Assembly (NCBI RefSeq): GCF_963921235.1
Contig: NC_086097.1
Span: 17,980,001 to 18,044,000, forward strand
Length of the DNA: 64,000 bases
From: Mobula hypostoma
Taxonomy: Eukaryota
Direction of reading: 5' to 3'
Shown in pieces: positions 2,808 through 52,406 of this stretch. The notes under the pieces are model-generated. The model was not told the origin of the DNA and did no database searches. It worked only from the letters and a program-made list of their open reading frames with translations. A program made the translations under genes and the position numbers. The stretch's first letter is position 1, and each line of letters opens with the position of its first letter.

Positions 2808-3368
2808 TGTAAAGGGGTTCTCTGTAGTGCTAACTGCTGAGGTAATGGGTTTTTCTGGTAGCTGCGATGTTTGGGTTATAACTACAGATAACGGGGAACT
2901 AACCAATGGGGGGACATGTTATTCTCTCTTGTATGTCTGGGAACCGAGCTCGTTCGCAGGCTTTTCGTCGAGGAGAGGAGAAGAGGAAGAACACGCTCGG
3001 AGCACTCTGGTAGACCACCGGGGGTTGATTCCAGCTGAGGGTCGTCAGAGTTCGGAGGAGATCGATTGGTGGAAAGGAGACCTGGTTCCGTGAGCTCCAG
3101 TGAATGTATTTGTGCACAGACTGTTTAAAACCAAATCTAAGTGGCGCCCTTTTCTTTTATATTTTGTTTCTCTACTAACCACATAGTCACAGTAAGATTT
3201 ATAAAGTGTAATTATTTAATCGCTTATTGTGTACTGTCTGTTTTTTGCATTGTGGGTCTGTACTGGGGTACATTACACAGTATCCACACAAACTTGATTA
3301 CACAGTTTGGTGGGGTTGAAGGCCGCTTCCCCTAGACGAACATGAGCTGAGCGAGTCTGAGGCTTACT
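2808..3368 (+). repeat. Gypsy 3' LTR
   Basis: Starts TGTAAAG directly after the PPT and ends CTTAC(T); CR1 sequence follows. Confidence 0.7.
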
Positions 3369-18004: not shown

Positions 18005-18091
18005 TTAGCTGGAAATCTCAATGGGAATCTCCCAACAGAAGATGTCTCTGTCCTTATCGTCCTGCAGCTGCCATTTAACCAGCAATTTAAC
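18005..18091 (-). CDS. NPC2: NPC2-A exon 4 (last coding exon)
   Basis: tccctgcag acceptor, [31 protein letters not shown]. Confidence 0.93.
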
Positions 18092-21000: not shown

Positions 21001-24000
21001 TTTTCTATTCCATGTATTTATGGCACAAAGGAGGTCTTTCAGTCCCATATGTCTGATCTCACCTTCCAACTCCAGGTCTAAAGCCTGTAGGTCATGGACC
21101 TCCAAACATTTTTTAAATTATGAAATTTTATGGCTCCACTGACCTTCAAGGAACCAAGTTCCAAATTCCCACCATCCATTCAGAAGAAATTTTATTCACT
21201 TGATCCCTGATCTTTCAACTAATTACTTTAAAATCTACAGCCGTTCCCCCCAACTCCTTTGCCAAGGGGTTATAATTATTCCATCAAGGCCAATTAATTA
21301 TGAACACATCAATCACACCTCTCTTCAGCTAATCTTTTCCAGCCTATCCGATCTTCCCTCATAGCTAATAGCTTTAGTGGGAAGAAATTCCACATTATGA
21401 GTAAGCCTGGCTACTCCTGCAGTTTTATAACACAGACCACAAGATATAAGACCAGAATTAGGCCATTCAGCCCATCGAGTCCACTCCACCATTTCATCAT
21501 GGCTGATCCCAGATCCCATTTGACCCCATACACCTGCCCACTCACTATATCCCCAGTCAACCAGGAATCTTTCAACATCCGCTTTAAAAACACCCACAGA
21601 CTTGGCCTCCACCAGTCCGTGGCAAAATATTCCACAGATTCACTTCGGCTTAAAAATCCTCCTTACCTCTGTTCTAAAAGGTCACCCCTCGATTTTGAGG
21701 TCTGCCCTCTAGTTTTGGATAACCCCACCAGAGGAAACATCCTCTCCACATCCACCTTATCAAGTCCTTTCAAATTTCAGTAGGTTTCAATGAGATCACT
21801 CCCCACCCCACCATTCTACAAAGCTGCCAAACACTCATGTTAATCCCTTCATTCCCGGAATCATCCTTGTGAACCTCCTCTGGACTCTATGACAACACAT
21901 CCTTTCTGAGATAAGGGACCCAAAACTGTCGACAACACTCCAACTGCAGTCTGACCAGTGTCTTATAAAGTTTCATCAATAACCTCTTGTTTCTATTCCC
22001 CTTGAAGGCAAATGCAATGTTGGCATTTATTTCTTTACCACAGACTCAACCTGCTAATTAACCTTCTGGGAGTCTTGCAGGAGGACTCTCAAGTCCCTCT
22101 GCACCTCTGATGTTTGAACCTTTTCCCCCATTTAGATAATAGTCTGCATTATTGTTCCTTTTACCAAAATGCATTATCACATATTTCCCAACATTTTAAT
22201 CCATCTGCCATTTTTTTGCCCATTCTTCTAATTTGTCCAAGTCCTGCTGCAATTGCATTGCCTCCTCATCACTACCTATACCCCTCCATCCATCTTTGTA
22301 GCATCCACGAACTTTGCCACAACCTCATCACTACACCTTGTTACAGTTTTTAAAAAGTTCAATCAAACTAATGATACGGGATTCCCCCCCCCCCCCAACA
22401 AAACCATGCTGACCATTTGACTGATCCATGGCTTTCCAAGTGCAACTTAATCTTTCTTGTTCTACAGAACATCATCTGATAACTTTGTTCCTGCTGACAT
22501 TAAGCTGGGCATTTAAGGACCTGGGAGTTTATTTCCATAGCCTCTTTTGAATAAAAACATCACATTTGCTGCCATTCAGTTATCAAACAATAGTTTGTCT
22601 ACCTGAACTTTCTCTGCAACTGTAATATTATTATCTGCATTCTAATTTCCTATTACTTCCTCAATGTGATTATGTATGGCATGGAAAACAGATGTTATTC
22701 TCTGTATCTAGGTGCACATGACTGTAATAAATCAATGGCTGATATCGCATCTGTGACTAGCAAAAATTTCAGAATCTGTCAGAGCCCCAGCAATTCCCCA
22801 TCCTCACCTCCCATTGAAGTTTTAAAATACATCTCATTAGTCTCTAGGACTCTGTCCACAGTTAACCTCTACCAGCCAAGAGTCACAGGAGTGAGGCTGC
22901 GGAAGTCGTGGTAAGGCAAGGATTACCTGGAGCAGTTTTAGTCAAGTGAGACCACCAGAGACACCTGTGCTTACTACAGCTGAGATAAACTGCAGCAAGA
23001 TGAGTGAAACCTTTCCTGAAAGATCTTCCTGAGGCATAGCCTCGATGTTGGGGGGGGTGGGGAGGTACTCAGATGAGTATCGGAGGGATGTGAAACATAC
23101 CCAACTATGGCTCTATTGTCTTTAACTTTGGTAGTCCTCTCAAAGTTTCCACTAACTGTTAAAACTTCTATTGTGAGTGGCGATTGATCTTGCAAGTTAA
23201 GAAATTCAAACTATACAATTTACAATGACCAATATCGGTAAATGATAAGCCAATTCTGAATAAAAATAGCAGTTTTCTGTTCAAATTTCAGACTAGTGTG
23301 TTCTCTCCTTGTGCACAAGTAAAATAAAAAGAATCTTAAGAATACATGTGTTCTGGGGCTAATTATTTCTACTTTGTTTTATTATCGGTAAAGAGTTACT
23401 TCGACAACGCTCAGCACATGTTGGTTGGATTCTGGGCAGCTGATGAATGTATACATTTCATGAGTTCCATCGTGAATTGGCAACATTTGTCATTTTTCTA
23501 GTATTCAGGAGAGGATAGATCCATTGGAAAGATCCCCAAACTGCATCCTTATTCCAAATGACTACATACATATGGTTAGTTGGCCCACAAGTTATTTAGC
23601 CTGACATTCAACAAGCACGCACATAAAGTCAGGACATTTCACTATCAATTCTGAGGATACTTACTGAGGGATATTCCTCTTTGATCTCCAAAGAATTGAT
23701 GTAGTTGTACTGCTGACCTACTCGAATAGGGCACTGAATTCCAGATTTACAACCATCATCATTAGGGAGATGGAAAGGAAGTGGAATGCCAGACAGGATA
23801 CCATGAACCACAGCTTTGCTCGTTTTGCTTGTAGTTACTGAAAGATAAGAAGTAGTTCAGTTAGAAAGATATTCCAATTTGGACACAAAAATAGCACAAC
23901 AAAAGCCCTATTCACAATCCAACTCTCCCACATCTCTGAGCTTGAGATAAAACAGGAGTGGGCAGAAATGAGGAGTTGGGGAGAAAATGGCCGTGCCCAT

Positions 24001-30000: not shown

Positions 30001-33000
30001 CTTTATCCAATTTATCAGTTACATAGAAGGTTGGTTTAGCCATGCAAGTTATCAACTGCATTCCGGCTTCTGTCCCTTGTTTCCAGTCGGGAAGAGTCCC
30101 AACCCAAAACATTTATTCTACTCCATAGATGCTGTTTGACTTGCTGAGTTCATCCAGCATTTTGTGTTACACAGGGTGAAAACAGCTCACTTGTATTGGA
30201 CAAGTTCTTTCTGAACAGAAATGGACTCCACAGAACAGAGCATGGCTTCCATACACAGGCGGTTGAGCACAGCAACCTCACTTACAGCTAATGAAGGTGA
30301 CGTTCACACCATACGTTTTTCCTTTGTGAAGTTGACATGGCAAGGAAGGACAGGCAGTGATATCCACCATGGTAAGATTCCCTGATTTTGAACCTGAAAC
30401 AACAAGAGTTAATGTCAGTTATTTCAGAGATATCCCAGATAAGTAATGAGAGATCGAAGCAGAACACCAACAGGGATTCTGCACGTACAGCAACAGGCCA
30501 TGTCCAGAATGAACTTTAGCCCTCAGACAGTTCCCACCCGAACCACTGGCTTTCAAACAATGAACAGCAACCTTCCCTCACATGAGTGGAATTGCACAAA
30601 TAGTTTTGAAGCATGTGATAGCTGCAGTGAAGAGCTAACAGCTCTCATTTCCAGACCATTTCCCCATAAAACTTAGGAAATGAAAATAATGACAAATACA
30701 GTTGAGGTTCAGTGAAGGGAAATGGTGAACAGGCAGTTTTGAAGAGCACACTGCGAGGAATCACGTGTAGATTAGGCACAGCAAGAAAGGGAACCTTCAA
30801 GAATCTGACATGTTAACGAAAACATTTCAGAATGAACTACCAAAAAGTCTTTACTAAGCTTCAAAGACAAATTTGCTTGTTGAACAGTTCTGTTCAATTC
30901 TGGGGGAAAAGACTCAAGTTATATGAAGAGTACTTTAAATGTAACAAGTGTTTAAACATTGCAATGCAGCAACTCTGTTTCAACAATTAGCCAGCGTTCC
31001 CCAGTGAGGCAGGGCTGTATTCTGCATGACTATTCCGTATGGAAGAGACCAGGGAATAACACCAGAAACCAGATTGATTACGTGCTTATAAGGAGGCATA
31101 GAAATACTCTGAAATCATGCAAAACATATCCAGGTGCAGACTGCTACAGTGATCACGTACCAATAATCAGCGTGATGTACCTGGGACACAGAAAGCTTAA
31201 AAAGACCAAGAGTAGAGCCAAAGCTGAATTTGGGACTTTTGAGGGAAAAAAAGACATCAAAAATGAATTCCAAATAACAGTGAAGAACAAATTCGAGGCT
31301 CTACAAAACATCACTATTATAGAACAACAATGGGAAAACCTCAGACAGCATAACACAAGCAGCAGAAGTGATTCCCAAAAACAACAGAAAAAGGTATAAA
31401 GAATTGGATGACAGAAGAAATTCTGAATCTTATGGAACAAAGAAGAAAATGTAAGGAAAACGAAAAAGCCTATGTATCCTTGCATGCACAGATAACAACC
31501 AAGTGCAAGGAAGCAAAAGAGAAGTGGCTGAAGGACAAATGTGAGTTAATAGAAAAATTGCAGAAGACCAACAACAGCAAACGAGATCAAAGAGGTCACA
31601 AATCGGAAGAAAAGTGGGGTAACAAAAGGATGTATAAAAGCAAAAGACTGCTCTACAATTATGGAAAAAGGAAAAATAATGCAAAAGTAGTCAGAATACA
31701 TCAAAGACCTATACGACGACAAAGACCGAGAGGCCAACTTTGATATTGGCAACAACGAGGGCCCAGCAGTACTGAAAGAAGAAGTGGAACATGTTATGAA
31801 AATGCGAAAGGGGAAATCATCAGGACCAGATAACATTCCAGTTGAACTGCATGAAGCACCAGAAGATTTTGATGTAGAGAAATTACCATTCTTATTGAAT
31901 AGAATATACAGTGGTAAAGTACCAGAATATCTTTTAAAGACAATATTCATTGCACTACCAAAGAAACCAGGTGCAACAGAGTGTGGACAACACAGAACAA
32001 TTAGTTTAATGAACCACCTCACAAAAATTCTACTTAGAATCATCATGCTCAGAATAAGACACAGAATTAAACCAGAGATCAGTGAAGAACAGGTTGGCTT
32101 TGTTGAAAGCAGGGGAACATCAAACAGCACTTGTATTCTCAGGAATATTATCAAAAGGTCAATAGAAGTACAACAAGACCTATACTTCTGTTTCATTGAC
32201 TACACAAAAACCTTTGACACAGTGAAACACCAAGTCATCATGAAAATGCTTAAAAATATTATTATTGATGGAAAAGATCTCAGAATAATCAGGAAGCTCT
32301 ACTGGCAAAGTACAGTCATACGGATAGACAACGAGATGGGTGAGTATCAGCCAATAAAGCGAGGAGTCAGACAGGGTTGTGTTCTATCACCAGACCTGTT
32401 CTCCCTGTACAGTGAAAACATCATGAGAACCATACAAGACCTACCTGGAGGATACAATATCAACAACCTCCACTATGCAATGATACAGTACTGATAGCAA
32501 ACAGTGAAGTAAATTTACAGAAACTAGTATCTACCATCAACACAGAGACCGAAAGACTTGGCCTAACCTTAAACAAAAAGAAAACTGAAGTAATGGTAAT
32601 ATCAAAGAAACCTGATATCCCAAACTGTAGGATTGTATTGGCAAATGAAATCCTGAAACAAGTCCACAACTTCAAGCACCTTGGATCATGGGTAACATCT
32701 GATGGCAAATGCGAAAGAGACATAAAAGCAAGAATAGCAATGGCAAGAACAGCATTTACAGAAATGAGAAACATCCTAATGAACAGGAAGATAGCGATTG
32801 ACATCTGCCTTAGAACTCTCAGCTGCTACATTCTTCCTATATTGATGTACGGCTGCGAGTCATGGACCATCACAAACGCAATGGAAAAACGAATCAATGC
32901 AGCAGAGATGTGGTTCCTCAGAAGAATGCTACGCATATCATATACGGACAGGATAACCAATGAAGAAGTTCTACAGAGAACGAAAACAAAACGTACATTA

Positions 33001-36000: not shown

Positions 36001-38693
36001 AAAACAAGACGAATGGTACCAAATGAGGATCTATCATTAGAACATTCTAATCCCACACAAATTGAAAAGGTGGATTTATCTGAAATTGTTGAATCCTAAT
36101 GGCGGTAAAATGCCAAAACAAACTGGCTTTCCTTAAAACAAGAGGTCAAAGACTTGGGTTAGACTTGAGAATCCTTGTGCAGAACACCCTGAAGGTTAAC
36201 TTGCAGGTTGAGTCAGTGGTGAGGAAGGCAGATGCAATGTTAGCATTCATTTCAAGAGATCTAGAATACAAGAGCAGGGATATGATGCTGAGGCTTTATA
36301 AGGGACTGATGAGGCCTCACCTTGAGTATGGTAAATAGTTTTGGGCCCCTTGTCATAGAAAAGATGTGCTGGCATTGGACAGGGTCCAGAGGAAGTTCAC
36401 AAGGATGATTCAAGGAATGAAAAAATTATCATACAGGGCCCATTTGATGGCTCTGGGTCTGTACTCACTGGAATTCAGAAGGATGAGGGGGGATCTCATT
36501 GAAACCTTTTGAATGTTGAAAGGCCTAGACAGAGTAGATGTGGAAAGGATGTTTCCCACAGTGGGAGAGTCTAGGACAAGAGGGCACAGCCTCAGGATAG
36601 AAGGACACCCTTTCAAAACCAATGCAGAGAAATTTCTTTAGCCAAAGGGTGGTGAATTTGTGGAATTTGTTGCCACATGCAGCTGGTTGTTGGGTGTATT
36701 TAAGGCAGAGATTTATAGGTTCTTGATTGGACATGGCATCAAAGGTTACAGGGAGAAGGCTGAGAACTGGGGTTCAGGAGGAGAAAAAAAAGGATCAGCC
36801 AGGATTGAAATATCAAGCAGACTCGATGGGCCAGATGGCCTAATTCTATTCCTGTGTCTTACGGTCAGAACAGGAGAGGGACACAGCCCACTGACTGGAC
36901 TTTGCACCTTTTTGCTGTGAAGTTCCCAAGTGTACCAGGTTCCTCCCACACCCCAACGACATACTGGCAGGTTAGCTGGGCTCTGTAAACTGCCTGGTGT
37001 GGGCGGGTGGCAGGAGAAGCAGGGGAAGTTGATGGGCATCGAGATAGATTTCTTTACAAGCAAATATGTGGGGAATAGGACTCATAAGATTGGTCTCAGA
37101 GACAGCATGGACTTGAGCTGAGTGGCCTTCCTCGCAAGCTCCTGGCAAACCGGACAGAGGGATTTCTACACATTCAGACCCCGCTCAAAGGCGAGGATGA
37201 GTCCCTCAGGGGTGGGGCAGTATGTAAATCAGCGATATGCAGGGTCATTATAACATTATGTAAATGAACATGTGTGCCCGATTAAAAGAATCAAAGTGAG
37301 ATACATCATATATTATTTTATGTATACACAGTAATTCGCGGAGCAAATAGGTCAAACTTGTACAGCCGTGGAGCAGCAGCAGCAACGGGGGGAAGCGGGT
37401 GGTGATCACATCTTAGAGGGGGGGCCAGGCTGAAGGTCCTCCTCTAACTCTCTGGCTCCTTCTTCAAGTATTTGTTGAGATTTGACTGCCCTTTCTTAAG
37501 TTTCCTCTCATGAATCAGTTCTTGGTAGCAGGAAATGATGTTGAGAACACCTTTCTTTGCCTTATTGCTCCGCTCCCAGTCAGGGTTATTATCGATGAAT
37601 CCACGACTTGCGCGATCGCGGTGAAGCCAGTGCTGAAGAATATTGTGGTGAGGTGTCCTGCTGGCGTTTCCTCTTCTCCATCCGTGCCCTCAGATTCATC
37701 CAGGATACGTTGCTCTGCCAATTCTCGAAGCTCTTCATTATTAAGGCACTCCCCATGAGAAGCTGATAGGGTGGGAGAGGGAAGGCAACAATACTAACCT
37801 TATTGTAGGTGGGAAAGGAAGTGGCTGTGGACGTGCAGAAAATGGAACAATGTCTTAAAACTGCCAGCTGTAGAGGAAACTATCTCCGGTTAACACCACT
37901 AATATCACTCCTATTCTAGGGTCTCCACCCGAAACAATTTCTTCACCCCCACTCGCCATAGATACTGCTCCACTCGCGGAGTTCCTCCCACACTCCAGAT
38001 TCCAGCATTTTTGCAGTCTCGTACGTCTATCTCCCAAGTACTGATGTGAAACAAACGTTACATCAAATTAGTCAAAATGACGAAGAATGAACTAGAATCT
38101 GTACAAATGCGACTCAGTGCCAATTAATTGTTTTGAACAAGTCTGTTATCAGCAGTAACTCCATAAAGAAACATTTGTCTGGAGCCCACTCAGTCTGCAT
38201 CACATGAAAGTGAATCACACACACCATCACCCCGCCGATCCACCACAGGAAAGTTAGCGTTCTTCTCATCCTTTATGCACGCTAAAGGTAATGGCAATAA
38301 CTACAGAGAGCACCCGACATGCCATTTCAATCCTATTATTAAAGTAGAGACCGGTCGAATCAGCCAGCACACTCTCGCACCGTATTCAGTGGGTGGCCCG
38401 CGTTTACTCTTGTCTTCCTGGAAATTAAAGAGAGGGGCGCAAAGTCCAGATGAAGCATTTTAATTTCACCGGTAAATAAAACACATGCGGTTAATAAACT
38501 TTTCAAGAGAACCGGAAGGGAGTGAAACTCTGTAAGTTTGGTGGGAGCACGGGAAGCAAATCACCATACCAAAAGTTTTCACCAGGTCCCACCACTCACC
38601 GCAGTCCATGAACTTCACCGGGTCAGCAGCCGACAGGGCCCATAAGCCCAGGAAGACGAGCAGACCAGCAAACACACAACACCCGCGCTCCAT
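18005..38693 (-). CDS. NPC2: NPC intracellular cholesterol transporter 2, paralogue A; spliced CDS join(38693-38600,30393-30286,23837-23665,18091-18005), 153 aa
   Basis: Four GT-AG exons of 94+108+173+87=462 nt with compatible phases 1,1,0. Translation: [153 protein letters not shown]. Signal peptide, six ML-domain cysteines and the NVT sequon are present, colinear with mammalian NPC2. Confidence 0.95.
18416..18451 (-). ncRNA. Minimal type I hammerhead ribozyme in PLE pseudo-LTR
   Basis: AGUC-CUGACGA-AGG(GUCUCGG)CCU-GAA-ACGU-C^GACU: intact core, stem I AGUC/GACU, stem II AGG/CCU, palindromic ACGU stem III, GUC cleavage triplet. Confidence 0.8.
18747..20465 (-). CDS. Penelope-like RT/GIY-YIG polyprotein, N-terminally truncated (~570 aa open)
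   Basis: ORF 18747..20528; the first ~21 codons are flanking intron sequence, and the element-derived part has no stop or frameshift. Confidence 0.8.
   Translation of the reverse strand, partial: TSSYLPLDRDPTKEHQAIVSHTINDFIRSGDLPSTATNLIVPTPRTSRFYLLPKIHKPACPGRPIVSACSCPTELVSAYLDTVLSPLVQSLPTYVRDTSHALKLFDDFKFPGPHRFIFTLDVQSLYTSIPHQEGLKALRFFLDSRPNQFPSTTTLLRLAELVLTLNNFSFCSSHFLQTKGVAMGTRMGPSYACLFVGFVEQSMFRAYSGICPPLFLRYIDDCIGAAPCTHAELVDFINFASNFHPALKFTWSISDTSLPFLDLSVSVSGDSLSTDVYYKPTDSHNYLDYSSSHPVSCKNAIPFSQFLRLRRICSQDEAFHSRTREMSSFFKERGFPSSTINSALKRISPISRTSALTPSSHHPTRNRVPLVLTYHPTSLRVQHIILRNFRHLQRDPTTKHIFPSPPLSAFRRDRSLHNSLVHSSPPSLPTDLPPGTYPCKRNKCYTCPYTSSLTTIQGPKQSFQVRHHFTCESTGVIYCVRCSRCGLLYIGETRRRLGDRFAEHLRSVRQRKQDLPVATHFNSTSHSHSDMSIHGLLYCKDEATLRLEEQHLIFRMGSLQPDGMNIDFSNFR
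21436..22322 (-). mobile_element. CR1 LINE 3' end
   Basis: Reverse complement of the CR1 3' regions at 5100-5990 and 58740-60120. Confidence 0.82.
23665..23837 (-). CDS. NPC2: NPC2-A exon 3
   Basis: ctttcag acceptor, 173 nt, ...[15 protein letters not shown]...[11 protein letters not shown]...EEYPS, GTAAGT donor. Confidence 0.95.
24486..26962 (-). mobile_element. Tc1/mariner DNA transposon with long (~200 bp) TIRs, degenerate
   Basis: TA|CAGTTGCAAGAAAAAGTCTGAACCCTTTGCA ... TGCAAAGAGTTCATAAACTTTTTCGCAACGG|TA; transposase motifs [16 protein letters not shown] and [11 protein letters not shown]. Confidence 0.85.
24743..25671 (-). mobile_element. Rex1/Babar LINE 3' part nested in the Tc1 element
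   Basis: [50 protein letters not shown]; internal deletions; AATAAA + CTATGA-type tail. Confidence 0.88.
27290..27850. repeat. Probable interspersed repeat (RTE-UTR-like non-autonomous element); family not established
   Basis: GC-richer block with sharp edges in an AT-rich intron; pattern recognition only. Confidence 0.35.
28220..29412 (+). mobile_element. Penelope-like element, 5'-truncated (thumb/linker + GIY-YIG + pseudo-LTR); in NPC2-A intron 2, antisense
   Basis: ORF 28184..29035 is nearly identical to the C-terminal half of the 18747 ORF; 13-bp TSD ATCAAACCCTGAT at 28207-28219 and 29413-29425. Confidence 0.93.
29315..29350 (+). ncRNA. Minimal type I hammerhead ribozyme
   Basis: AGTC CTGACGA AGG GTCTTGG CCT GAAACGTC GACT; differs from the other copies by one loop II base. 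Confidence 0.78.
29500..29950 (+). mobile_element. Rex1/L2-type LINE 3' fragment (same family as 61165-61947)
   Basis: KAASI...[28 protein letters not shown] remnants. Confidence 0.75.
30286..30393 (-). CDS. NPC2: NPC2-A exon 2
   Basis: ttgtttcag acceptor, 108 nt, (G)[41 protein letters not shown] donor; the correct frame is absent from the ORF track. Confidence 0.93.
31040..33250 (+). mobile_element. RTE (BovB-like) LINE, 5'-truncated and frameshifted; NPC2-A intron 1, antisense
   Basis: [17 protein letters not shown] (APE end); [49 protein letters not shown]; (TGAA)n tail; TSD TTCCGTA at 31033-31039 and 33251-33257. Confidence 0.92.
34158..34371 (+). mobile_element. tRNA-Arg(TCG)-derived SINE, probably RTE-mobilised
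   Basis: Head GCCGGCT...AGCCGGC acceptor-like stem, A box TGGCATAGTGG, GACTTCGGA anticodon loop, B-box variant ATTCAAATCC; (TTC)n tail; 14-bp TSD TATATTTACTAATT at 34144-34157 and 34372-34385. Confidence 0.85.
36160..36865 (+). mobile_element. CR1 LINE 3' end
   Basis: [32 protein letters not shown]; homologous to 5310-5990. Confidence 0.85.
37480..37770 (-). mobile_element. Possible Tigger/pogo transposase C-terminal remnant
   Basis: [19 protein letters not shown]..acidic stretch resembles Tigger C-termini; a similar weak remnant (NFERTTKV) lies at ~23050-23195. Confidence 0.4.
38600..38693 (-). CDS. NPC2: NPC2-A exon 1 (signal peptide + DPVKFMDCG)
   Basis: ATG at 38693; donor G|GTGAGT at 38600/38599; phase 1. 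Confidence 0.93.
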
Positions 38694-38774
38694 GTCCTTT
38701 CCCTATCCGGCCGAGTCAAGGCAAGGAGCAACAGCGGATCCAACTCCGAGGCCTCATATGACTCCGCTGCCCCC

Positions 38775-39010
38775 ACCTCACCCAATCTTGTCCAGAGCTT
38801 TCTCCGCCTCACCCAATCCTGTCCAGAGCTTTCTCCGCCTCACCCAATCCTGTCCAGAGATTTCTCCGCCTCACCCAATCCTGTCCTGAGCTTTCTCCGC
38901 TTCAGCCAATCCCGATGCAAATCCTTTCGAATTTCATCCAATCCCGATTTGGGATTCGCCTACTTCACCCAATCCCGACACGGACTCCTTCCCTCCTCGC
39001 CCAATCCTGA
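38775..39010. promoter_or_regulatory. 31-bp minisatellite / array of eight phased CCAAT boxes upstream of NPC2-A
   Basis: Unit CACCCAATCCTGTCCAGAGCTTTCTCCGCCT; CCAAT starts at 38782, 38813, 38844, 38875, 38906, 38938, 38969, 39001. Confidence 0.8.
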
Positions 39011-39044
39011 CGCGGGCTCCTCCTTCGCTTCCAGTTCCTCATTC

Positions 39045-39420
39045 TCAGGGAGGAGGAGCTGTACTTCTGGATATTTTCCAACCTAATGGCATGGAAATCA
39101 CTTCTCCTTTCGGTAATGCTCTCCTCTCCTTTATTTCGCCACTTTGTTCTCTAGCTGTTCTCCTCCCCTACCGCCTCATCCTTCCAATGTTCCACTCTCC
39201 TCTCCTATCAGATTCCTTCCACTCAGCCTTTCACTCAGCCTTTTCCACCTATCACCTCCCGGCTTCTATTTGAATGCCTCTCGCCTGACTTCACCTACCA
39301 CCTCTAGCTTGTCCTCCTTCCCTTCCCCTGCAGTCCCGAAGAAGCATCTTGGCTCGAAACAACTGTTCACTCACTTCTATAGTTGCTGAGTTCCTCCAGC
39401 ATGTTGTGGGTGTTGCTGTG
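39045..39420 (+). mobile_element. Old degenerate Penelope 3' end + pseudo-LTR
   Basis: Remnant QPNGMEI...FR* resembles the C-terminus [13 protein letters not shown]; followed by a pyrimidine-rich tract, a decayed hammerhead (cagtcccgaagaagcatcttggctcgaaac) and the standard tail. Confidence 0.6.
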
Positions 39421-39711
39421 AAACATTTTAACTGTTTCCCCTACCCACTGATGTGCCTCCATCCACTGAGCGTTTCTATAATTTTATCACCCGTATCCCC
39501 AGTTTAAATATTACGCCCCCTGTCACCGATTTCTCCCCTACCCCATCCTCCCTACCACCGGGCTTGGAGGCTGCTCCAATGTAATAACCTCACAAATGAT
39601 TGTGTGGCTTGTTGATTATTGTAAGCAAATATGATAGCATATCTTTAATTTTACATAGGAATGGAAATATCACATTAATTAAAAGCCAATAGATTTGTGT
39701 AAATATGCCCT

Positions 39712-41370
39712 TAGACGTAAGAGCAGAATTAGGCCATTCAGCCAATTGAGTCTGCTCCACCATTCCATCATGACTGATTTATTTCCCCCCAGCCCCATTT
39801 TCCTGCTTTCTCCCTATAACCTTTGACACGCTGAATTATCACCCTCCACTTTAAATATGGTCAATGATGGCCTCCACAGCCATCCGTGGCAACAAATTTC
39901 ACAGCTTCACCACCCACTTACTACAGCAATTCCTCATCTCTGTTCTAAAAGGAAATCTTCATGAACTGATTCTATGCCTTCTGATCCTAAACTTGCCAAC
40001 TATTGGGAATGTTCCACTCTATCTAGGCCTTTTAATATTCAGTAAGTTTCAATGAGATCCTCACATTCTCCCAATCTTCAGTGAGTATAGGCACAGAGCC
40101 ATCAAACTCTTCTCATACATTAACCCTTTCATTCCTAGGATCATCCTCTGGATACTCTCCAATACCAGCAGATCCTTTCTTAGAGATAGGGTCCCAAAAA
40201 GAGCTCACAATATTCAAAATATGACCTTATAAAATCTCAGCATTACATCCTTGCTTCTATATTCTAGTCCTCTGACTTGCTTTCCTTACTACTAACACAA
40301 TCTGAAAGTTAAACTTTAGGGAACCTTGCACTAGGACTCCAAAGCCCCTATGCATCTCCAATTTCTCAATTCACTCACATTTAATGGTTTACACTTTTAT
40401 TCCTTCTACCAAAGTACACGATAAATCACTTTCCTGCACAGTATTCCATCTACTGGCTCTTTGCCCATTCTCCTAATCTGTCAGAGTCCCACAGACTGCT
40501 TTCCTCAACACTGTCTGCCCCATAACCATCTTCACATCATCTGCAAACTTGGCTACAGAGTCGTTAATTCTATCCAGATTATTAACATATAAAAAATAGT
40601 GGACCCAACACCAACCCCTGTAGAAAACCACTAGTCACTGGAAGACAAACCAGATAAGACTCACTTTATTCCCACCCTCTGCTCTCTGCCAGTCAGTCAG
40701 AGCTAGTACCTTTCCTGTAATATTATAGGCTCTTACAGTATCTTGCTCAGCAGCCTCATGTGCAGCAGCTTGTCAAAAGCCTTCTGAAAAAACCAACAGT
40801 ATCCAATGTCTCTTCCGCCTGTTATTTCCTCAAAGAATTCCAACGGATTTGTCAGATAAGATTTCTCCTCAAGGAAACCATGCTGACTTCAGCCTATTTT
40901 GTCATGTGCTTCAAAGTACCCTGAAACTTAACCCTTAATAATGTAAAATCTTCCCAACCACTGAGGGCTGACTAACTGGACTATAATTTACTTTCTTGTG
41001 CCTCTCTCCATTCTTAAAGACTGGAGTGACATTTGCAATTTTCCAGCCCACTGGAACCATTCCAGAACCTAGTGATTCTTGAAAGATGACTACTAATGTC
41101 TCCAACAATCTTTTCAGCTGCCCCTTTCAGAACCCTGGGTGACTTATCTACCCTCAGACCTTTCAGCTTCCCCAGCACTTCCTCCTGTAATAGCACTCAC
41201 TTCTGTCCACTGACATGCTTGTATTTCTGGCATGCTGCTGGTGCCTTCGCAGTGAAGACTGATGCAAAATACCTTAGTTTTACTGCCATTTCGTTGTTCT
41301 CCATGACCAACCAGCATCACTTTCCATCTGTTCAATGTCTACTTTTGCTTCTTACTCTTTAAACAGATCT
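39712..41370 (-). mobile_element. CR1 LINE RT/3' part, degenerate (plus a small + strand CR1 piece at 41385-41685)
   Basis: VLGKLKGLRVDKSP..; reverse complement of the CR1 3' UTR at 39715-39900. Confidence 0.82.
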
Positions 41371-51755: not shown

Positions 51756-52406
51756 GCCTCACCGTCCTACAGTGAGCGGCCCGCCGCCGCCGAGAGATGG
51801 TTTTAAAGCCCTGCCATCCATCCCGGCCGGTGGGCGAACTCCCCGCCCCACAGGGCGGACCCGGACCCGGACCCCACCTTCTTGTTCACACCGGCATCCC
51901 ATCACCCCTCAGGGTACACGTCTGCTTTCTGCATTAAACACCGCCTTCCTTTATTTGGAAAACACCTACTCACAGAGAATTTCAGAATATTTTTATTGAC
52001 AGTCACTCAACTGTACTACCACCTTCCCAACTACAAAGTCAAGAACGCTGGGGCAGGTCGCATCCTTGATTGACAAAAGGGAAAACCAATAAAACCGTAG
52101 CGCTCTAAAACTAGCCAATCAGATGCTTAAAATTGTTTTCTGCGTCATTGGAACGCCTTCCTGATTATGACAGACACTTTTAATCTCCAATGTAGACGAT
52201 AGGTTGTGAAAAATATGCAACTCACGTTGCACCAATGGGCGTAGTGAGTAGGTGGGGCAAGGGGCTGTTTATGATAGACGTGTTCTTCAGCTAATGAAGT
52301 TGGCGGTTTCTGGTACAAACGGGTGGGAGTACGCCAATGGGGAAAAGGGCTGAAGGCGGTACTTCCGATGACATTTGATCCGCCTCCACCGGGCACCGGA
52401 ACGAAG
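51756..52406. promoter_or_regulatory. NPC2-B/ISCA2 bidirectional promoter
   Basis: ~650 bp between divergent ATGs; CpG-rich; GC boxes at 51841-51858; CCAAT/ATTGG at 52086, 52115, 52147, 52187, 52232, 52334; ETS-type ACTTCCG at 52361; YY1-like AAGATGG over the ISCA2 ATG; TATA-like TTTAAAA ~50 nt upstream of the NPC2-B ATG. Confidence 0.75.

What the first reader, a model, noticed from the sequence alone, without database searches (positions are those of the whole stretch)
38775..39010. NPC2-A upstream region built from a 31-bp minisatellite: eight CCAAT boxes phased at three helical turns
Seen: CCAAT spacing is 31,31,31,31,32,31,32 bp, starting ~90 bp upstream of the ATG. The four to five ATG-proximal units are near-perfect repeats, most with TCCGCC (GC-box-like). 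The three distal units have diverged almost everywhere except CCAATCC and the spacing. Known: NF-Y binds CCAAT in either orientation, and ~31-33-bp spaced multi-CCAAT arrays occur in vertebrate cell-cycle promoters. NF-Y and Sp1 are also SREBP co-factors at sterol genes. Inference: motif and phase kept despite spacer decay suggests selection. This paralogue lacks the ISCA2-shared promoter and may use a copy-number-tunable NF-Y array that has recently re-expanded.
Basis: partly seen in the sequence, partly recalled or inferred. Interest (0 to 1): 0.72.

Follow-up and report, generated by a model that had tools for sequence, protein, structure and literature searches.

The report
Amplified CCAAT-box promoter of ray NPC2-A
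In the devil ray, one old CCAAT promoter box in front of a cholesterol-transport gene copy (NPC2-A) has been multiplied in place into eight boxes spaced 31-32 bp apart, and the gene's transcripts start at the edge of this repeat; it is a clean natural example of a known promoter design, not a new kind of element.

Summary
Eight same-strand CCAAT pentamers lie at 38782-39005 with spacings 31,31,31,31,32,31,32. They start 89 bp upstream of the ATG (38693, minus strand) of a spliced, expressed NPC2 paralogue.

- **Not a transposon or dispersed satellite.** DNA of a sister species shows single-copy depth across it.
- **Amplified in place.** The sawfish orthologue has exactly one copy of the same extended box (GGGATTGGGTGAAG). 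The sawfish box's upstream and downstream flanks match the two ends of the Mobula array.
- **Constraint.** Four units are 94-97% alike and four are old (42-65%). Yet GATTGG is invariant, which is far from chance (P<5e-6).
- **Transcription start.** RNA contigs run from the exon 1 splice donor into units 1-3 and no further. The start sites therefore sit at or inside the proximal edge, not upstream of the array.
- **Spacing.** A 31-bp direct CCAAT spacing is the published preferred NF-Y dimer geometry in human promoters.

Best reading: an NF-Y array promoter, with binding inferred and not shown. It is a new member of a known kind. Unchecked notes in this scan report similar phased CCAAT arrays at two other promoters of the same genome (MAP10, XRCC4/TMEM167A).

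The parts
38776..39025 (-). Whole array: eight 31-32-bp units. Each has an inverted CCAAT box relative to the gene (CCAAT reads on the + strand, ATTGG on the gene's sense strand).
   Evidence: alignment A1. CpG observed/expected is about 0.9 here, against 0.17-0.45 in 4-kb windows away from the promoters.
38776..38899 (-). Four young, near-identical proximal units (consensus on + strand CCTCACCCAATCCTGTCCAGAGCTTTCTCCG).
   Evidence: TRF period 31, 94% matches. Four matches at 1 mismatch or fewer. Pairwise identity 94-97%. In the sister species' DNA the k-mer depth is about 3-4 times the single-copy level.
38900..39025 (-). Four old, diverged distal units. Units 5-7 are of type YTTCANCCAATCCCGA. 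Unit 8 is of type CCTCGCCCAATCCTGA.
   Evidence: They are present in the sister species with 6 substitutions, none inside a CCAAT. Unit 7 matches the single sawfish box at 86% over 28 bp and unit 5 at 94% over 18 bp.
39026..39042 (-). Ancestral upstream flank of the box (sense ATGAGGAACTGGAAGCG...). It is conserved with sawfish.
   Evidence: Pristis L002 2842-2893 aligns to window 39042-38991 at 81% over 53 bp, E 1.6e-8.
38694..38849 (-). 5' UTR as far as RNA contigs reach. High depth to 38818/38819. The next stretch to 38849 has 1-3% of that depth.
   Evidence: records 5, 6, 9, 24 and 25. The stop at 38818 is a k-mer branching point of the repeat, not a mapped start. There is no RNA depth in the bins 38863-39066 or in the intron at 38200-38556. 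No RNA holder was listed for 38850-39165.
38744..38765 (-). Conserved block GGAGTCATATGAGGCCTCGGAG holding an E-box (CATATG). Sawfish has CACCTG at the same place. Sevengill and whale sharks have TCATGTGA.
38716..38757 (-). Upstream ORF (MRPRSWIRCCSLP, then stop) in the 5' UTR. The same ATG is annotated as the start codon, in frame, in two stingrays.
   Evidence: for the sequence. P0164 and P0299 begin MRPRSWIRC.
38600..38693 (-). NPC2-A coding exon 1 (signal peptide up to ...PVKFMDCG).
   Evidence: The RNA contig's loose end at 38598 is the reverse complement of the start of exon 2. The protein equals P0298.
30286..30393 (-). NPC2-A exon 2. Exon 3 is at 23665-23832 and exon 4 at 18005-18091.
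   Evidence: Pfam ML domain PF02221 on exon 3, E 5.7e-12.
39043..39462 (.). Inserted repetitive DNA between the promoter and the next conserved block (39463-39497). It is absent from sawfish.
   Evidence: Pristis 2769-2803 aligns to window 39497-39463, while only 38 bp separate the two blocks in Pristis. Segments 39169-39270 and 39373-39423 have k-mer depth of 1e5-1e6 in sister-species DNA.

Best explanation
The array is the proximal promoter of NPC2-A. It arose in the devil-ray lineage by tandem amplification, in place, of a 31-bp piece of the ancestral promoter.

**What was amplified.** The piece holds one inverted CCAAT box and its flanks (sense ...AGGAGCCCGGCGAC-GGGATTGGGTGAAG). An early amplification gave the now diverged units 5-8. 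A later one gave the four near-identical units next to the gene.

**Proposed mechanism (inferred).** Each unit is one binding site for the CCAAT factor NF-Y, a histone-fold trimer. Its footprint of about 24 bp fits one per unit. The 31-32-bp period, three helical turns, puts all trimers on one face of the DNA, and this is the spacing NF-Y dimers prefer in human promoters. Bound NF-Y would keep the CpG-rich region open and recruit the transcription machinery. Initiation is spread over the gene-proximal edge of the array, so boxes 3-8 lie about 55-215 bp upstream of the bulk of starts. Boxes 1-3 are transcribed in some or all mRNAs.

**Shown here:** the array, its single-locus nature, its origin from one conserved box, non-random conservation of the core, expression and splicing of the gene, and 5' ends inside the array.

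**Inferred:** NF-Y as the binder, an additive or cooperative effect of copy number, and selection for the expansion.
For: 1. **Structure.**
2. **Origin.** The sawfish orthologue (L002) has one ATTGG, at -122 from its ATG, and no tandem repeat.
   - Pristis 2873-3096 aligns to window 38823-38598 at 75% over 227 bp, E 2e-38. This covers box, 5' UTR and exon 1.
   - Pristis 2842-2893 aligns to window 39042-38991 at 81%, E 1.6e-8. This covers the upstream flank and unit 8.
   - The flanks of the single box therefore sit at the two ends of the array. All eight units align to the sawfish box with GATTGG invariant.
3. **Not a dispersed repeat.** Depth in the sister species' genomic contigs is 4.2-4.7 over the flanks and distal units and 12-16 over the proximal units. 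Real transposon pieces 200 bp further on reach 1e5-1e6. There is no other copy in the window.
4. **Constraint.** P<5e-6 for the invariant block. None of the 6 substitutions between the species in the distal units falls in a CCAAT (not significant alone).
5. **Promoter position.** RNA contigs of three runs start at the spliced exon 1 and end in units 2-3. Nothing lies upstream and nothing in the intron. CpG observed/expected is 0.9.
6. **Geometry, from the literature.**
   - Direct CCAAT repeats peak at 31 bp, first C to first C, in NF-Y-bound human promoters. They lie on the same helical face. The minimum spacing is 24 bp, and NF-Y bends DNA by about 80 degrees (PMC4982600).
   - NF-Y sits at -40 to -100 from start sites in either orientation, and all five core bases are critical (PMC3730095).
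Against: - No binding or reporter data exist for any ray.
- The flanks are not the textbook NF-Y optimum. C is at -1 in six units and C at +2 in seven, where purines are preferred. That preference is from my memory of the Mantovani consensus and was not checked here.
- ENCODE-wide analysis finds 24-28 and 35-37 bp as the commonest distances (PMC4889920), so 31 bp is one preferred class, not the only one.
- The constant period is inherent to tandem duplication.
- The exact start site is not mapped. Contigs break at repeated 31-mers, and a rough depth model puts most 5' ends near 38760-38820.
- One RNA contig (X11, record 9) carries 30 letters beyond 38819 that do not match the window. I could not read them.
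Confidence: 0.6

Rival explanations
1. Mostly neutral minisatellite. One or two boxes do the work, as in sawfish. The other copies are slippage products that are tolerated, not selected, and copy number has little effect on expression.
For: - Sawfish and whale shark run the orthologous gene with a single box.
- Tandem repeats keep their period without selection.
- The scan's other notes suggest that promoters in this genome often carry minisatellites, which could reflect a mutational tendency.
- The proximal units are too young to show constraint.
Against: - In the four old units everything has decayed to 42-65% identity except the box, P<5e-6. This is hard to get without purifying selection on each copy.
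- Unit lengths stayed at 31-32 bp despite that much substitution.
Confidence: 0.2
2. The repeated site is read by another factor than NF-Y, or by NF-Y in competition with one. The conserved core is longer than CCAAT (sense CGGGATTGGGTGAAGCGG). It holds a CACCC/GT box (KLF/Sp type). On the CCAAT strand, TCACCCAAT is close to the sterol element TCACNCCAC.
For: - The 18-nt core is shared by sawfish and Mobula units.
- TC at -4/-3 is invariant.
- A GGGTGAGG GT-box without ATTGG stands at about the same place in the sevengill shark (by eye, not statistically supported).
- Overlapping SREBP and CCAAT-complex sites inside a promoter tandem repeat of a sterol gene are documented in Aspergillus cyp51A (PMC4954732).
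Against: - Within the array the GT-box part varies: GGCTGA, GGATGA and GGGCGA in units 5, 6 and 8. GATTGG never varies.
- The SRE likeness is 7 of 9 bases and comes from my memory of the consensus.
- Sites that overlap cannot be co-occupied.
Confidence: 0.12
3. The array is part of a transposon, for example an LTR or Penelope-like element with internal CCAAT repeats as in human ERV9/LTR12. It only happens to lie before the gene.
For: - Transposon DNA abuts the promoter at 39043-39462.
- In sawfish a Penelope-like hammerhead-tail remnant ends about 15 bp before the box.
- NF-Y-bound CCAAT repeats in LTR12 are known (PMC3730095).
Against: - The array has single-copy depth in genomic DNA.
- It shows no similarity to the Penelope-like copies in the window. 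Similarity to these elements beyond the hammerhead tail is not better than shuffles.
- Both flanks are orthologous to a single-box promoter.
Confidence: 0.03
4. The repeat acts mainly at the RNA level, as a structured or protein-binding 5' UTR together with the upstream ORF, and not as DNA.
For: Units 1-3 are transcribed in some mRNAs, and a 13-codon uORF follows.
Against: - Only 1-3% of the RNA depth reaches beyond 38819, and none reaches units 4-8.
- The conserved units 5-8 are not transcribed.
Confidence: 0.03

Closest known systems
Direct CCAAT-box dimers at 31 bp in NF-Y/c-Fos-bound human promoters (Haubrock et al. 2016, PMC4982600). TOP2B has two inverted boxes 32 bp apart plus an Sp1 site.
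   Same: Same-strand CCAAT boxes 31-32 bp apart (first C to first C), promoter-proximal, with GC-rich spacers. The same-face geometry is three helical turns.
   Different: The human modules have two boxes, rarely three, and are not tandem duplications of one another. Here there are eight boxes made by amplifying one unit, and the start sites lie at or inside the array. Binding is not shown here.
Multi-CCAAT arrays of G2/M genes (cyclin B2, CDC25C) and the four-box array of the mouse Mrps12/Sarsm bidirectional promoter (PMC1802594).
   Same: Several precisely spaced CCAAT boxes on one strand, bound by NF-Y, make up the core of a TATA-less promoter.
   Different: Those arrays have 3-4 boxes with unrelated spacers, and many act with CDE/CHR cell-cycle elements. 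NPC2-A is a lysosomal cholesterol carrier, and no CHR was looked for or seen.
Human ABO upstream minisatellite with CBF/NF-Y motifs (Kominato 1997, Irshaid 1999 and Yu 2000, as cited in PMC2988417).
   Same: A minisatellite in which every unit carries an NF-Y site. In ABO the unit number (1 or 4) is allele-specific, and four units are linked with higher reporter activity.
   Different: The ABO repeat lies about 4 kb upstream and acts as an enhancer. From my memory, not checked here, its unit is 43 bp. This array is the promoter itself, with a 31-bp unit, and polymorphism is unknown.
ERV9/LTR12 U3 repeats with CCAAT and GATA motifs (PMC3730095).
   Same: Tandem units each with a CCAAT box, bound by NF-Y, able to drive or enhance transcription.
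   Different: Those are retroviral LTRs present in many copies. This array is single-locus and derived from the gene's own old promoter.
TR34 tandem repeat in the Aspergillus fumigatus cyp51A promoter (PMC4954732).
   Same: A roughly 30-bp promoter tandem duplication in a sterol-pathway gene. It multiplies transcription-factor sites (SREBP, with an overlapping CCAAT-complex site) and raises expression.
   Different: It is fungal, has two copies, and the CCAAT complex acts there as a repressor. It is an analogy only.

Membership tests
NF-Y multi-CCAAT promoter module | Intact CCAAT pentamer in every site | tested here: met
   8 of 8 units. The pentamer is also kept in the sawfish single box.
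NF-Y multi-CCAAT promoter module | Spacing of at least 24 bp that allows co-occupancy, with same-face phasing (31, 41, 52 bp) | tested here: met
   Spacings are 31-32 bp throughout. The criterion is from PMC4982600.
NF-Y multi-CCAAT promoter module | Flanking bases that fit the NF-Y matrix | tested here: inconclusive
   C at -3, A at -2 and C at +1 fit. C/T at -1 in seven units and C at +2 do not fit the purine preference as I recall it. No matrix was available to score them.
NF-Y multi-CCAAT promoter module | Position about 40-100 bp upstream of the transcription start | tested here: inconclusive
   RNA contigs end in units 1-3. The ends are set by repeated k-mers, so the start is known only to about 38760-38850. 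With that range, boxes 3-5 fall in the canonical window.
NF-Y multi-CCAAT promoter module | NF-Y occupancy and loss of activity on CCAAT mutation | not testable with these tools
   Needs EMSA or ChIP and reporter assays.
Minisatellite / VNTR | Head-to-tail units of 10-100 bp | tested here: met
   TRF period 31. Eight units align.
Minisatellite / VNTR | Length polymorphism between alleles or individuals | not tested
   Contigs of short-read runs break inside the repeat. The sister species has a similar multi-copy proximal part, at depth ratio about 3.5, but no exact count was possible.
Dispersed satellite or transposon family | Many copies elsewhere in the genome | tested here: not met
   Single-copy k-mer depth in genomic contigs of the sister species. 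No other copy in the 64-kb window. Orthologous single-box locus in sawfish.
SREBP/NF-Y sterol-regulated composite promoter | A sterol regulatory element (TCACNCCAC) about 15-20 bp from a CCAAT box | tested here: not met
   Only an overlapping 7-of-9 likeness (TCACCCAAT) exists, with no separate SRE in the 26-bp spacer. The consensus is from memory.

The most novel reading that the evidence does not exclude
In mobulid rays, promoters repeatedly grow by amplifying a single factor site at a fixed three-turn phase. For NPC2-A this would have moved and broadened transcription initiation.

- Sharks keep a TFE-type E-box (TCATGTGA), and the whale shark also has a TATA-like box downstream of it. In rays that E-box has decayed and is transcribed.
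- Eight in-phase histone-fold NF-Y trimers, each bending DNA by about 80 degrees, would wrap roughly 250 bp into a nucleosome-like superstructure. That structure would replace the -1 nucleosome and fix the start zone at its edge.
- Other notes of this scan, unchecked, report CCAAT arrays at MAP10 and XRCC4/TMEM167A and a CTCF-motif array at SRP72 in the same genome.
Probability: 0.15. Interest if true: 0.7.

Novelty: new member of a known kind. Interest (0 to 1): 0.45.

Why it matters
**Promoter evolution caught in the act.** The ancestral state (one box, in sawfish) and the derived state (eight boxes, in devil rays) are both available. Old and young duplication layers sit in the same array. 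This makes it a ready natural series for asking how the number of NF-Y sites at the preferred 31-bp phase scales promoter output and positions the start site. That question has so far been addressed mostly with two-box human promoters.

**Promoter fate after gene duplication.** NPC2-B keeps the shared CpG promoter with the ISCA2-like gene. NPC2-A has its own promoter in sharks, sawfish and Mobula. In the one skate examined I found no first exon for it, and the annotated product starts from B's exon 1.

**A possible genome-wide habit.** If the other phased CCAAT arrays noted in this genome are real and independent, the shared period would be evidence for selection on helical phase. That would be of wider interest than this single locus.

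Tried and rejected
- **Transposon or satellite origin.** Rejected.
- **Homology between the NPC2-A and NPC2-B promoters**, that is, an array built from the paralogue's promoter. None was found beyond 8-mers.
- **Splice-acceptor reading of the contig end at 38818 (CAG|G).** Rejected. The end is exactly the first repeated 31-mer, the pyrimidine tract is poor, and every unit has the same sequence.
- **Rfam scan of 38000-40200.** No hit, so there is no intact hammerhead next to the array.
- **Fetching the promoters of the closest relatives.** The tool returned no DNA because the files are too large for Mobula birostris, Hypanus sabinus, Hemitrygon akajei, Mustelus asterias and M. hypostoma itself. 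The age of the expansion within stingrays and mobulids therefore stays open.
- **The Logan transcript of a related ray (L001).** It has only 19 nt of 5' UTR.
- **Second RNA search on 38850-39165.** No RNA holder was listed. This is weak negative evidence only.
- **The 30 unmatched letters on the X11 contig.**
- **Other points.** The N run in the whale-shark locus was left as it is.

Full report
**Observation**

The + strand of 38776-39025 holds eight CCAAT pentamers, at 38782, 38813, 38844, 38875, 38906, 38938, 38969 and 39001. The spacings are 31,31,31,31,32,31,32. This is the densest CCAAT/ATTGG cluster in the window: 8 in 250 bp against a mean of 0.70. Tandem Repeats Finder reports 38776-38912 as period 31, 4.4 copies, 94% matches. 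The 31-nt consensus occurs four times at 3 or fewer mismatches, only here, against 0 expected from shuffles.

Units 1-4 are 94-97% identical to each other. Units 5-8 are 42-65% identical to them, and units 7 and 8 are 81% alike. The invariant columns are TC, CCAATC and one G. Uniform scattering of the observed mismatches never produced an invariant run of 7 columns in 200,000 trials. With units 5 and 6 alone, P = 1.3e-4.

**The gene**

The array lies upstream of a minus-strand gene.
- Exon 1 runs from the ATG at 38693 to 38600 ([32 protein letters not shown]).
- Exon 2 is at 30393-30286, exon 3 at 23832-23665 and exon 4 at 18091-18005.
- Exon 3 carries the ML domain, PF02221, E 5.7e-12.
- The joined product equals P0298, named NPC intracellular cholesterol transporter 2-like of Mobula hypostoma. 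This identifies the genome.

A second paralogue, NPC2-B, lies upstream on the same strand, with exons at 51755-51669, 50357-50247, 46473-46306 and 44406-44320. NPC2-B is head-to-head with a + strand first exon (ATG 52407, MVVSGLLRRSLLVAVGFCCRR, followed by a GT donor). That exon is orthologous to exon 1 of a skate gene whose product carries Pfam Fe-S_biosyn. The same neighbour stands next to B in a stingray. Both paralogue types occur in sharks and rays, so the duplication is old. The two promoters show no homology.

**Transcription**

Contigs of three runs of the same species lie on the stretch with no mismatch, from 38598 to 38818 or 38819. The depths are 487, 803 and 144. Two of the contigs continue into the rest of the mRNA. 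The loose end at 38598 is the reverse complement of the start of exon 2. These are therefore spliced RNAs and the exon 1-2 junction is verified.

The end at 38818 is not a mapped start. The first 31-mer that recurs inside the repeat begins at 38789, so the assembly graph branches exactly there. A 61-nt unitig covers 38789-38849 at 1-3% of the main depth. No RNA lies in the depth bins 38863-39066, nor in the intron at 38200-38556. No RNA holder was listed for 38850-39165.

A rough linear-decline model of the X10 depths (2065 before 38645, mean 803 after) puts most 5' ends near 38760-38820. I treat this only as an indication. The conclusion is that transcripts start at or inside the gene-proximal edge of the array. 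One to three boxes are transcribed and five to seven are upstream. One contig (X11, record 9) has 30 further letters that do not fit the window, and these stay unexplained.

**Not a dispersed repeat**

Genomic contigs of a close relative (about 2-4% divergent, coded organism B) cover the whole region.
- Depth is 4.2-4.7 over the flanks and the distal units.
- Depth is 12-16 over the proximal units. That is about 3.5 copies of the shared k-mers, so the relative also has several young units.
- Depth is 1e5-1e6 over two transposon pieces at 39169-39270 and 39373-39423.

The six substitutions between the two species within 38900-39025 all fall outside the CCAATs. This is not significant alone.

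**Origin**

The orthologous locus of the smalltooth sawfish (L002, ATG at 3001) has no tandem repeat. It has exactly one ATTGG, at -122, inside GACGGGATTGGGTGAAGCGGG. Three alignments define the relationship:
- Pristis 2873-3096 aligns to window 38823-38598 at 75% over 227 bp, E 2e-38. This covers box, 5' UTR and exon 1.
- Pristis 2842-2893 aligns to window 39042-38991 at 81% over 53 bp, E 1.6e-8. This covers the upstream flank plus unit 8.
- Pristis 2769-2803 aligns to window 39497-39463.

The two flanks of the single sawfish box thus sit at the two ends of the Mobula array. All eight units align to the sawfish segment with GATTGG invariant. The stretch 39043-39462 is an insertion in Mobula. 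The array is therefore an in-place amplification of a 31-bp piece of the old promoter.

The whale shark has one forward CCAAT at -120 and a TATA-like box at -55. The sevengill shark has no CCAAT within 440 bp. The inverted box may therefore be a batoid feature, and a single box, or none, is the older state. Contraction in sawfish cannot be excluded with two batoid points.

**Mechanism**

From the literature:
- In human promoters bound by NF-Y, direct CCAAT repeats peak at 31 bp (first C to first C), with further peaks every 10-11 bp. This places both trimers on one face. NF-Y contacts span -7 to +17, which gives a minimum of 24 bp, and each trimer bends DNA by about 80 degrees (PMC4982600).
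- NF-Y sits at -40 to -100 from start sites in either orientation, and all five core bases matter (PMC3730095).
- Arrays of 3-4 spaced boxes drive cyclin B2, CDC25C and the Mrps12/Sarsm promoter (PMC1802594).
- Minisatellites whose units carry NF-Y sites are known at ABO (PMC2988417) and in ERV9 LTRs (PMC3730095).

The devil-ray array fits this design unit for unit. Its CpG observed/expected of 0.9 also fits an active, unmethylated promoter. I therefore read it as an NF-Y array promoter, with confidence 0.6.

Points against:
- No binding data exist.
- The flanks are not optimal by my recollection of the consensus.
- ENCODE-wide, the commonest distances are 24-28 and 35-37 bp (PMC4889920).
- A constant period is built into any tandem repeat.

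**Rivals**

| Rival | Confidence |
|---|---|
| Largely neutral minisatellite with one working box | 0.2 |
| Another reader of the longer core, a KLF/Sp-type GT box or an SRE-like TCACCCAAT | 0.12 |
| Transposon origin | 0.03 |
| RNA-level role | 0.03 |

The second rival is weakened because the GT-box bases vary among the old units while GATTGG does not.

**Context in this scan**

Unchecked first-reader notes report seven phased CCAAT boxes at the MAP10 promoter and a phased CCAAT minisatellite at XRCC4/TMEM167A in the same genome. A followed-up note reports a CTCF-motif minisatellite forming the SRP72 promoter. I could not read those places. If they are independent arrays with the same period, that would be the stronger evidence for selection on phase.

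**Verdict**

The feature is real and correctly located. It is a lineage-specific eight-fold amplification of a conserved promoter CCAAT box at the NF-Y-preferred spacing, with transcription starting at its edge. It is a new member of a known kind and of moderate interest.

Noticed in passing
window 38716-38757 (minus strand): A 13-codon upstream ORF (MRPRSWIRCCSLP, then stop) lies in the NPC2-A 5' UTR, 22 nt before the main ATG. In Hemitrygon akajei and Hypanus sabinus the same ATG is in frame and annotated as the start codon, giving 167-aa products that begin MRPRSWIRC.
   Followed up: partly
window 38744-38765; L002 2925-2945; L004 about 2900-2940; L005 about 1387-1424: A block GAGTCA-E-box-GAGG.C.CGGA is conserved before NPC2-A in sharks and rays. 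The E-box is TCATGTGA in the sevengill and whale sharks, which to my recollection is the MITF/TFE (lysosomal CLEAR-like) type. It is CACCTG in sawfish and CATATG in Mobula, where it is transcribed. This may record a shift of the start site and loss of a lysosomal-gene control element in rays.
   Followed up: partly
P0153 (Hemitrygon akajei) and P0009 with locus L003 (Rhinoraja longicauda): Annotated isoforms join NPC2-B exons 1-2 (stingray) or exon 1 (skate) to NPC2-A exons 2-4, as read-through chimeras. In the skate locus no NPC2-A exon 1 could be found between the two genes, so A may there depend on B's promoter.
   Followed up: partly
window 38819 and beyond, run X11 record 9: One 837-nt RNA contig carries 30 letters past 38819 that do not match the window, while the other two runs do not show this. 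It may be an adapter, a chimera or a variant allele.
   Followed up: no
L002 2818-2861; window 39043-39462: In sawfish a Penelope-like hammerhead-tail remnant (ACGTTTCAGGTCGGAGACCCTTCATGAG...) ends about 15 bp before the CCAAT box, and Mobula shares its last roughly 20 nt. In Mobula a further roughly 420-bp repetitive insertion with extremely high-copy pieces sits directly upstream of the promoter.
   Followed up: partly
window 51756-52406: The NPC2-B / ISCA2-like bidirectional region (652 bp ATG to ATG) holds five CCAAT and one ATTGG on the + strand, without periodicity. It also has GGGGCGGGG boxes and a TTTAAAA element about 45 bp before the NPC2-B ATG.
   Followed up: partly
window 38257-38352 and 38694-38735: The sister species' genomic contig skips 38257-38352 in intron 1 (a 96-bp indel). 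It shows 5 substitutions within 38706-38730 of the 5' UTR, several times the local average of about 2%.
   Followed up: no
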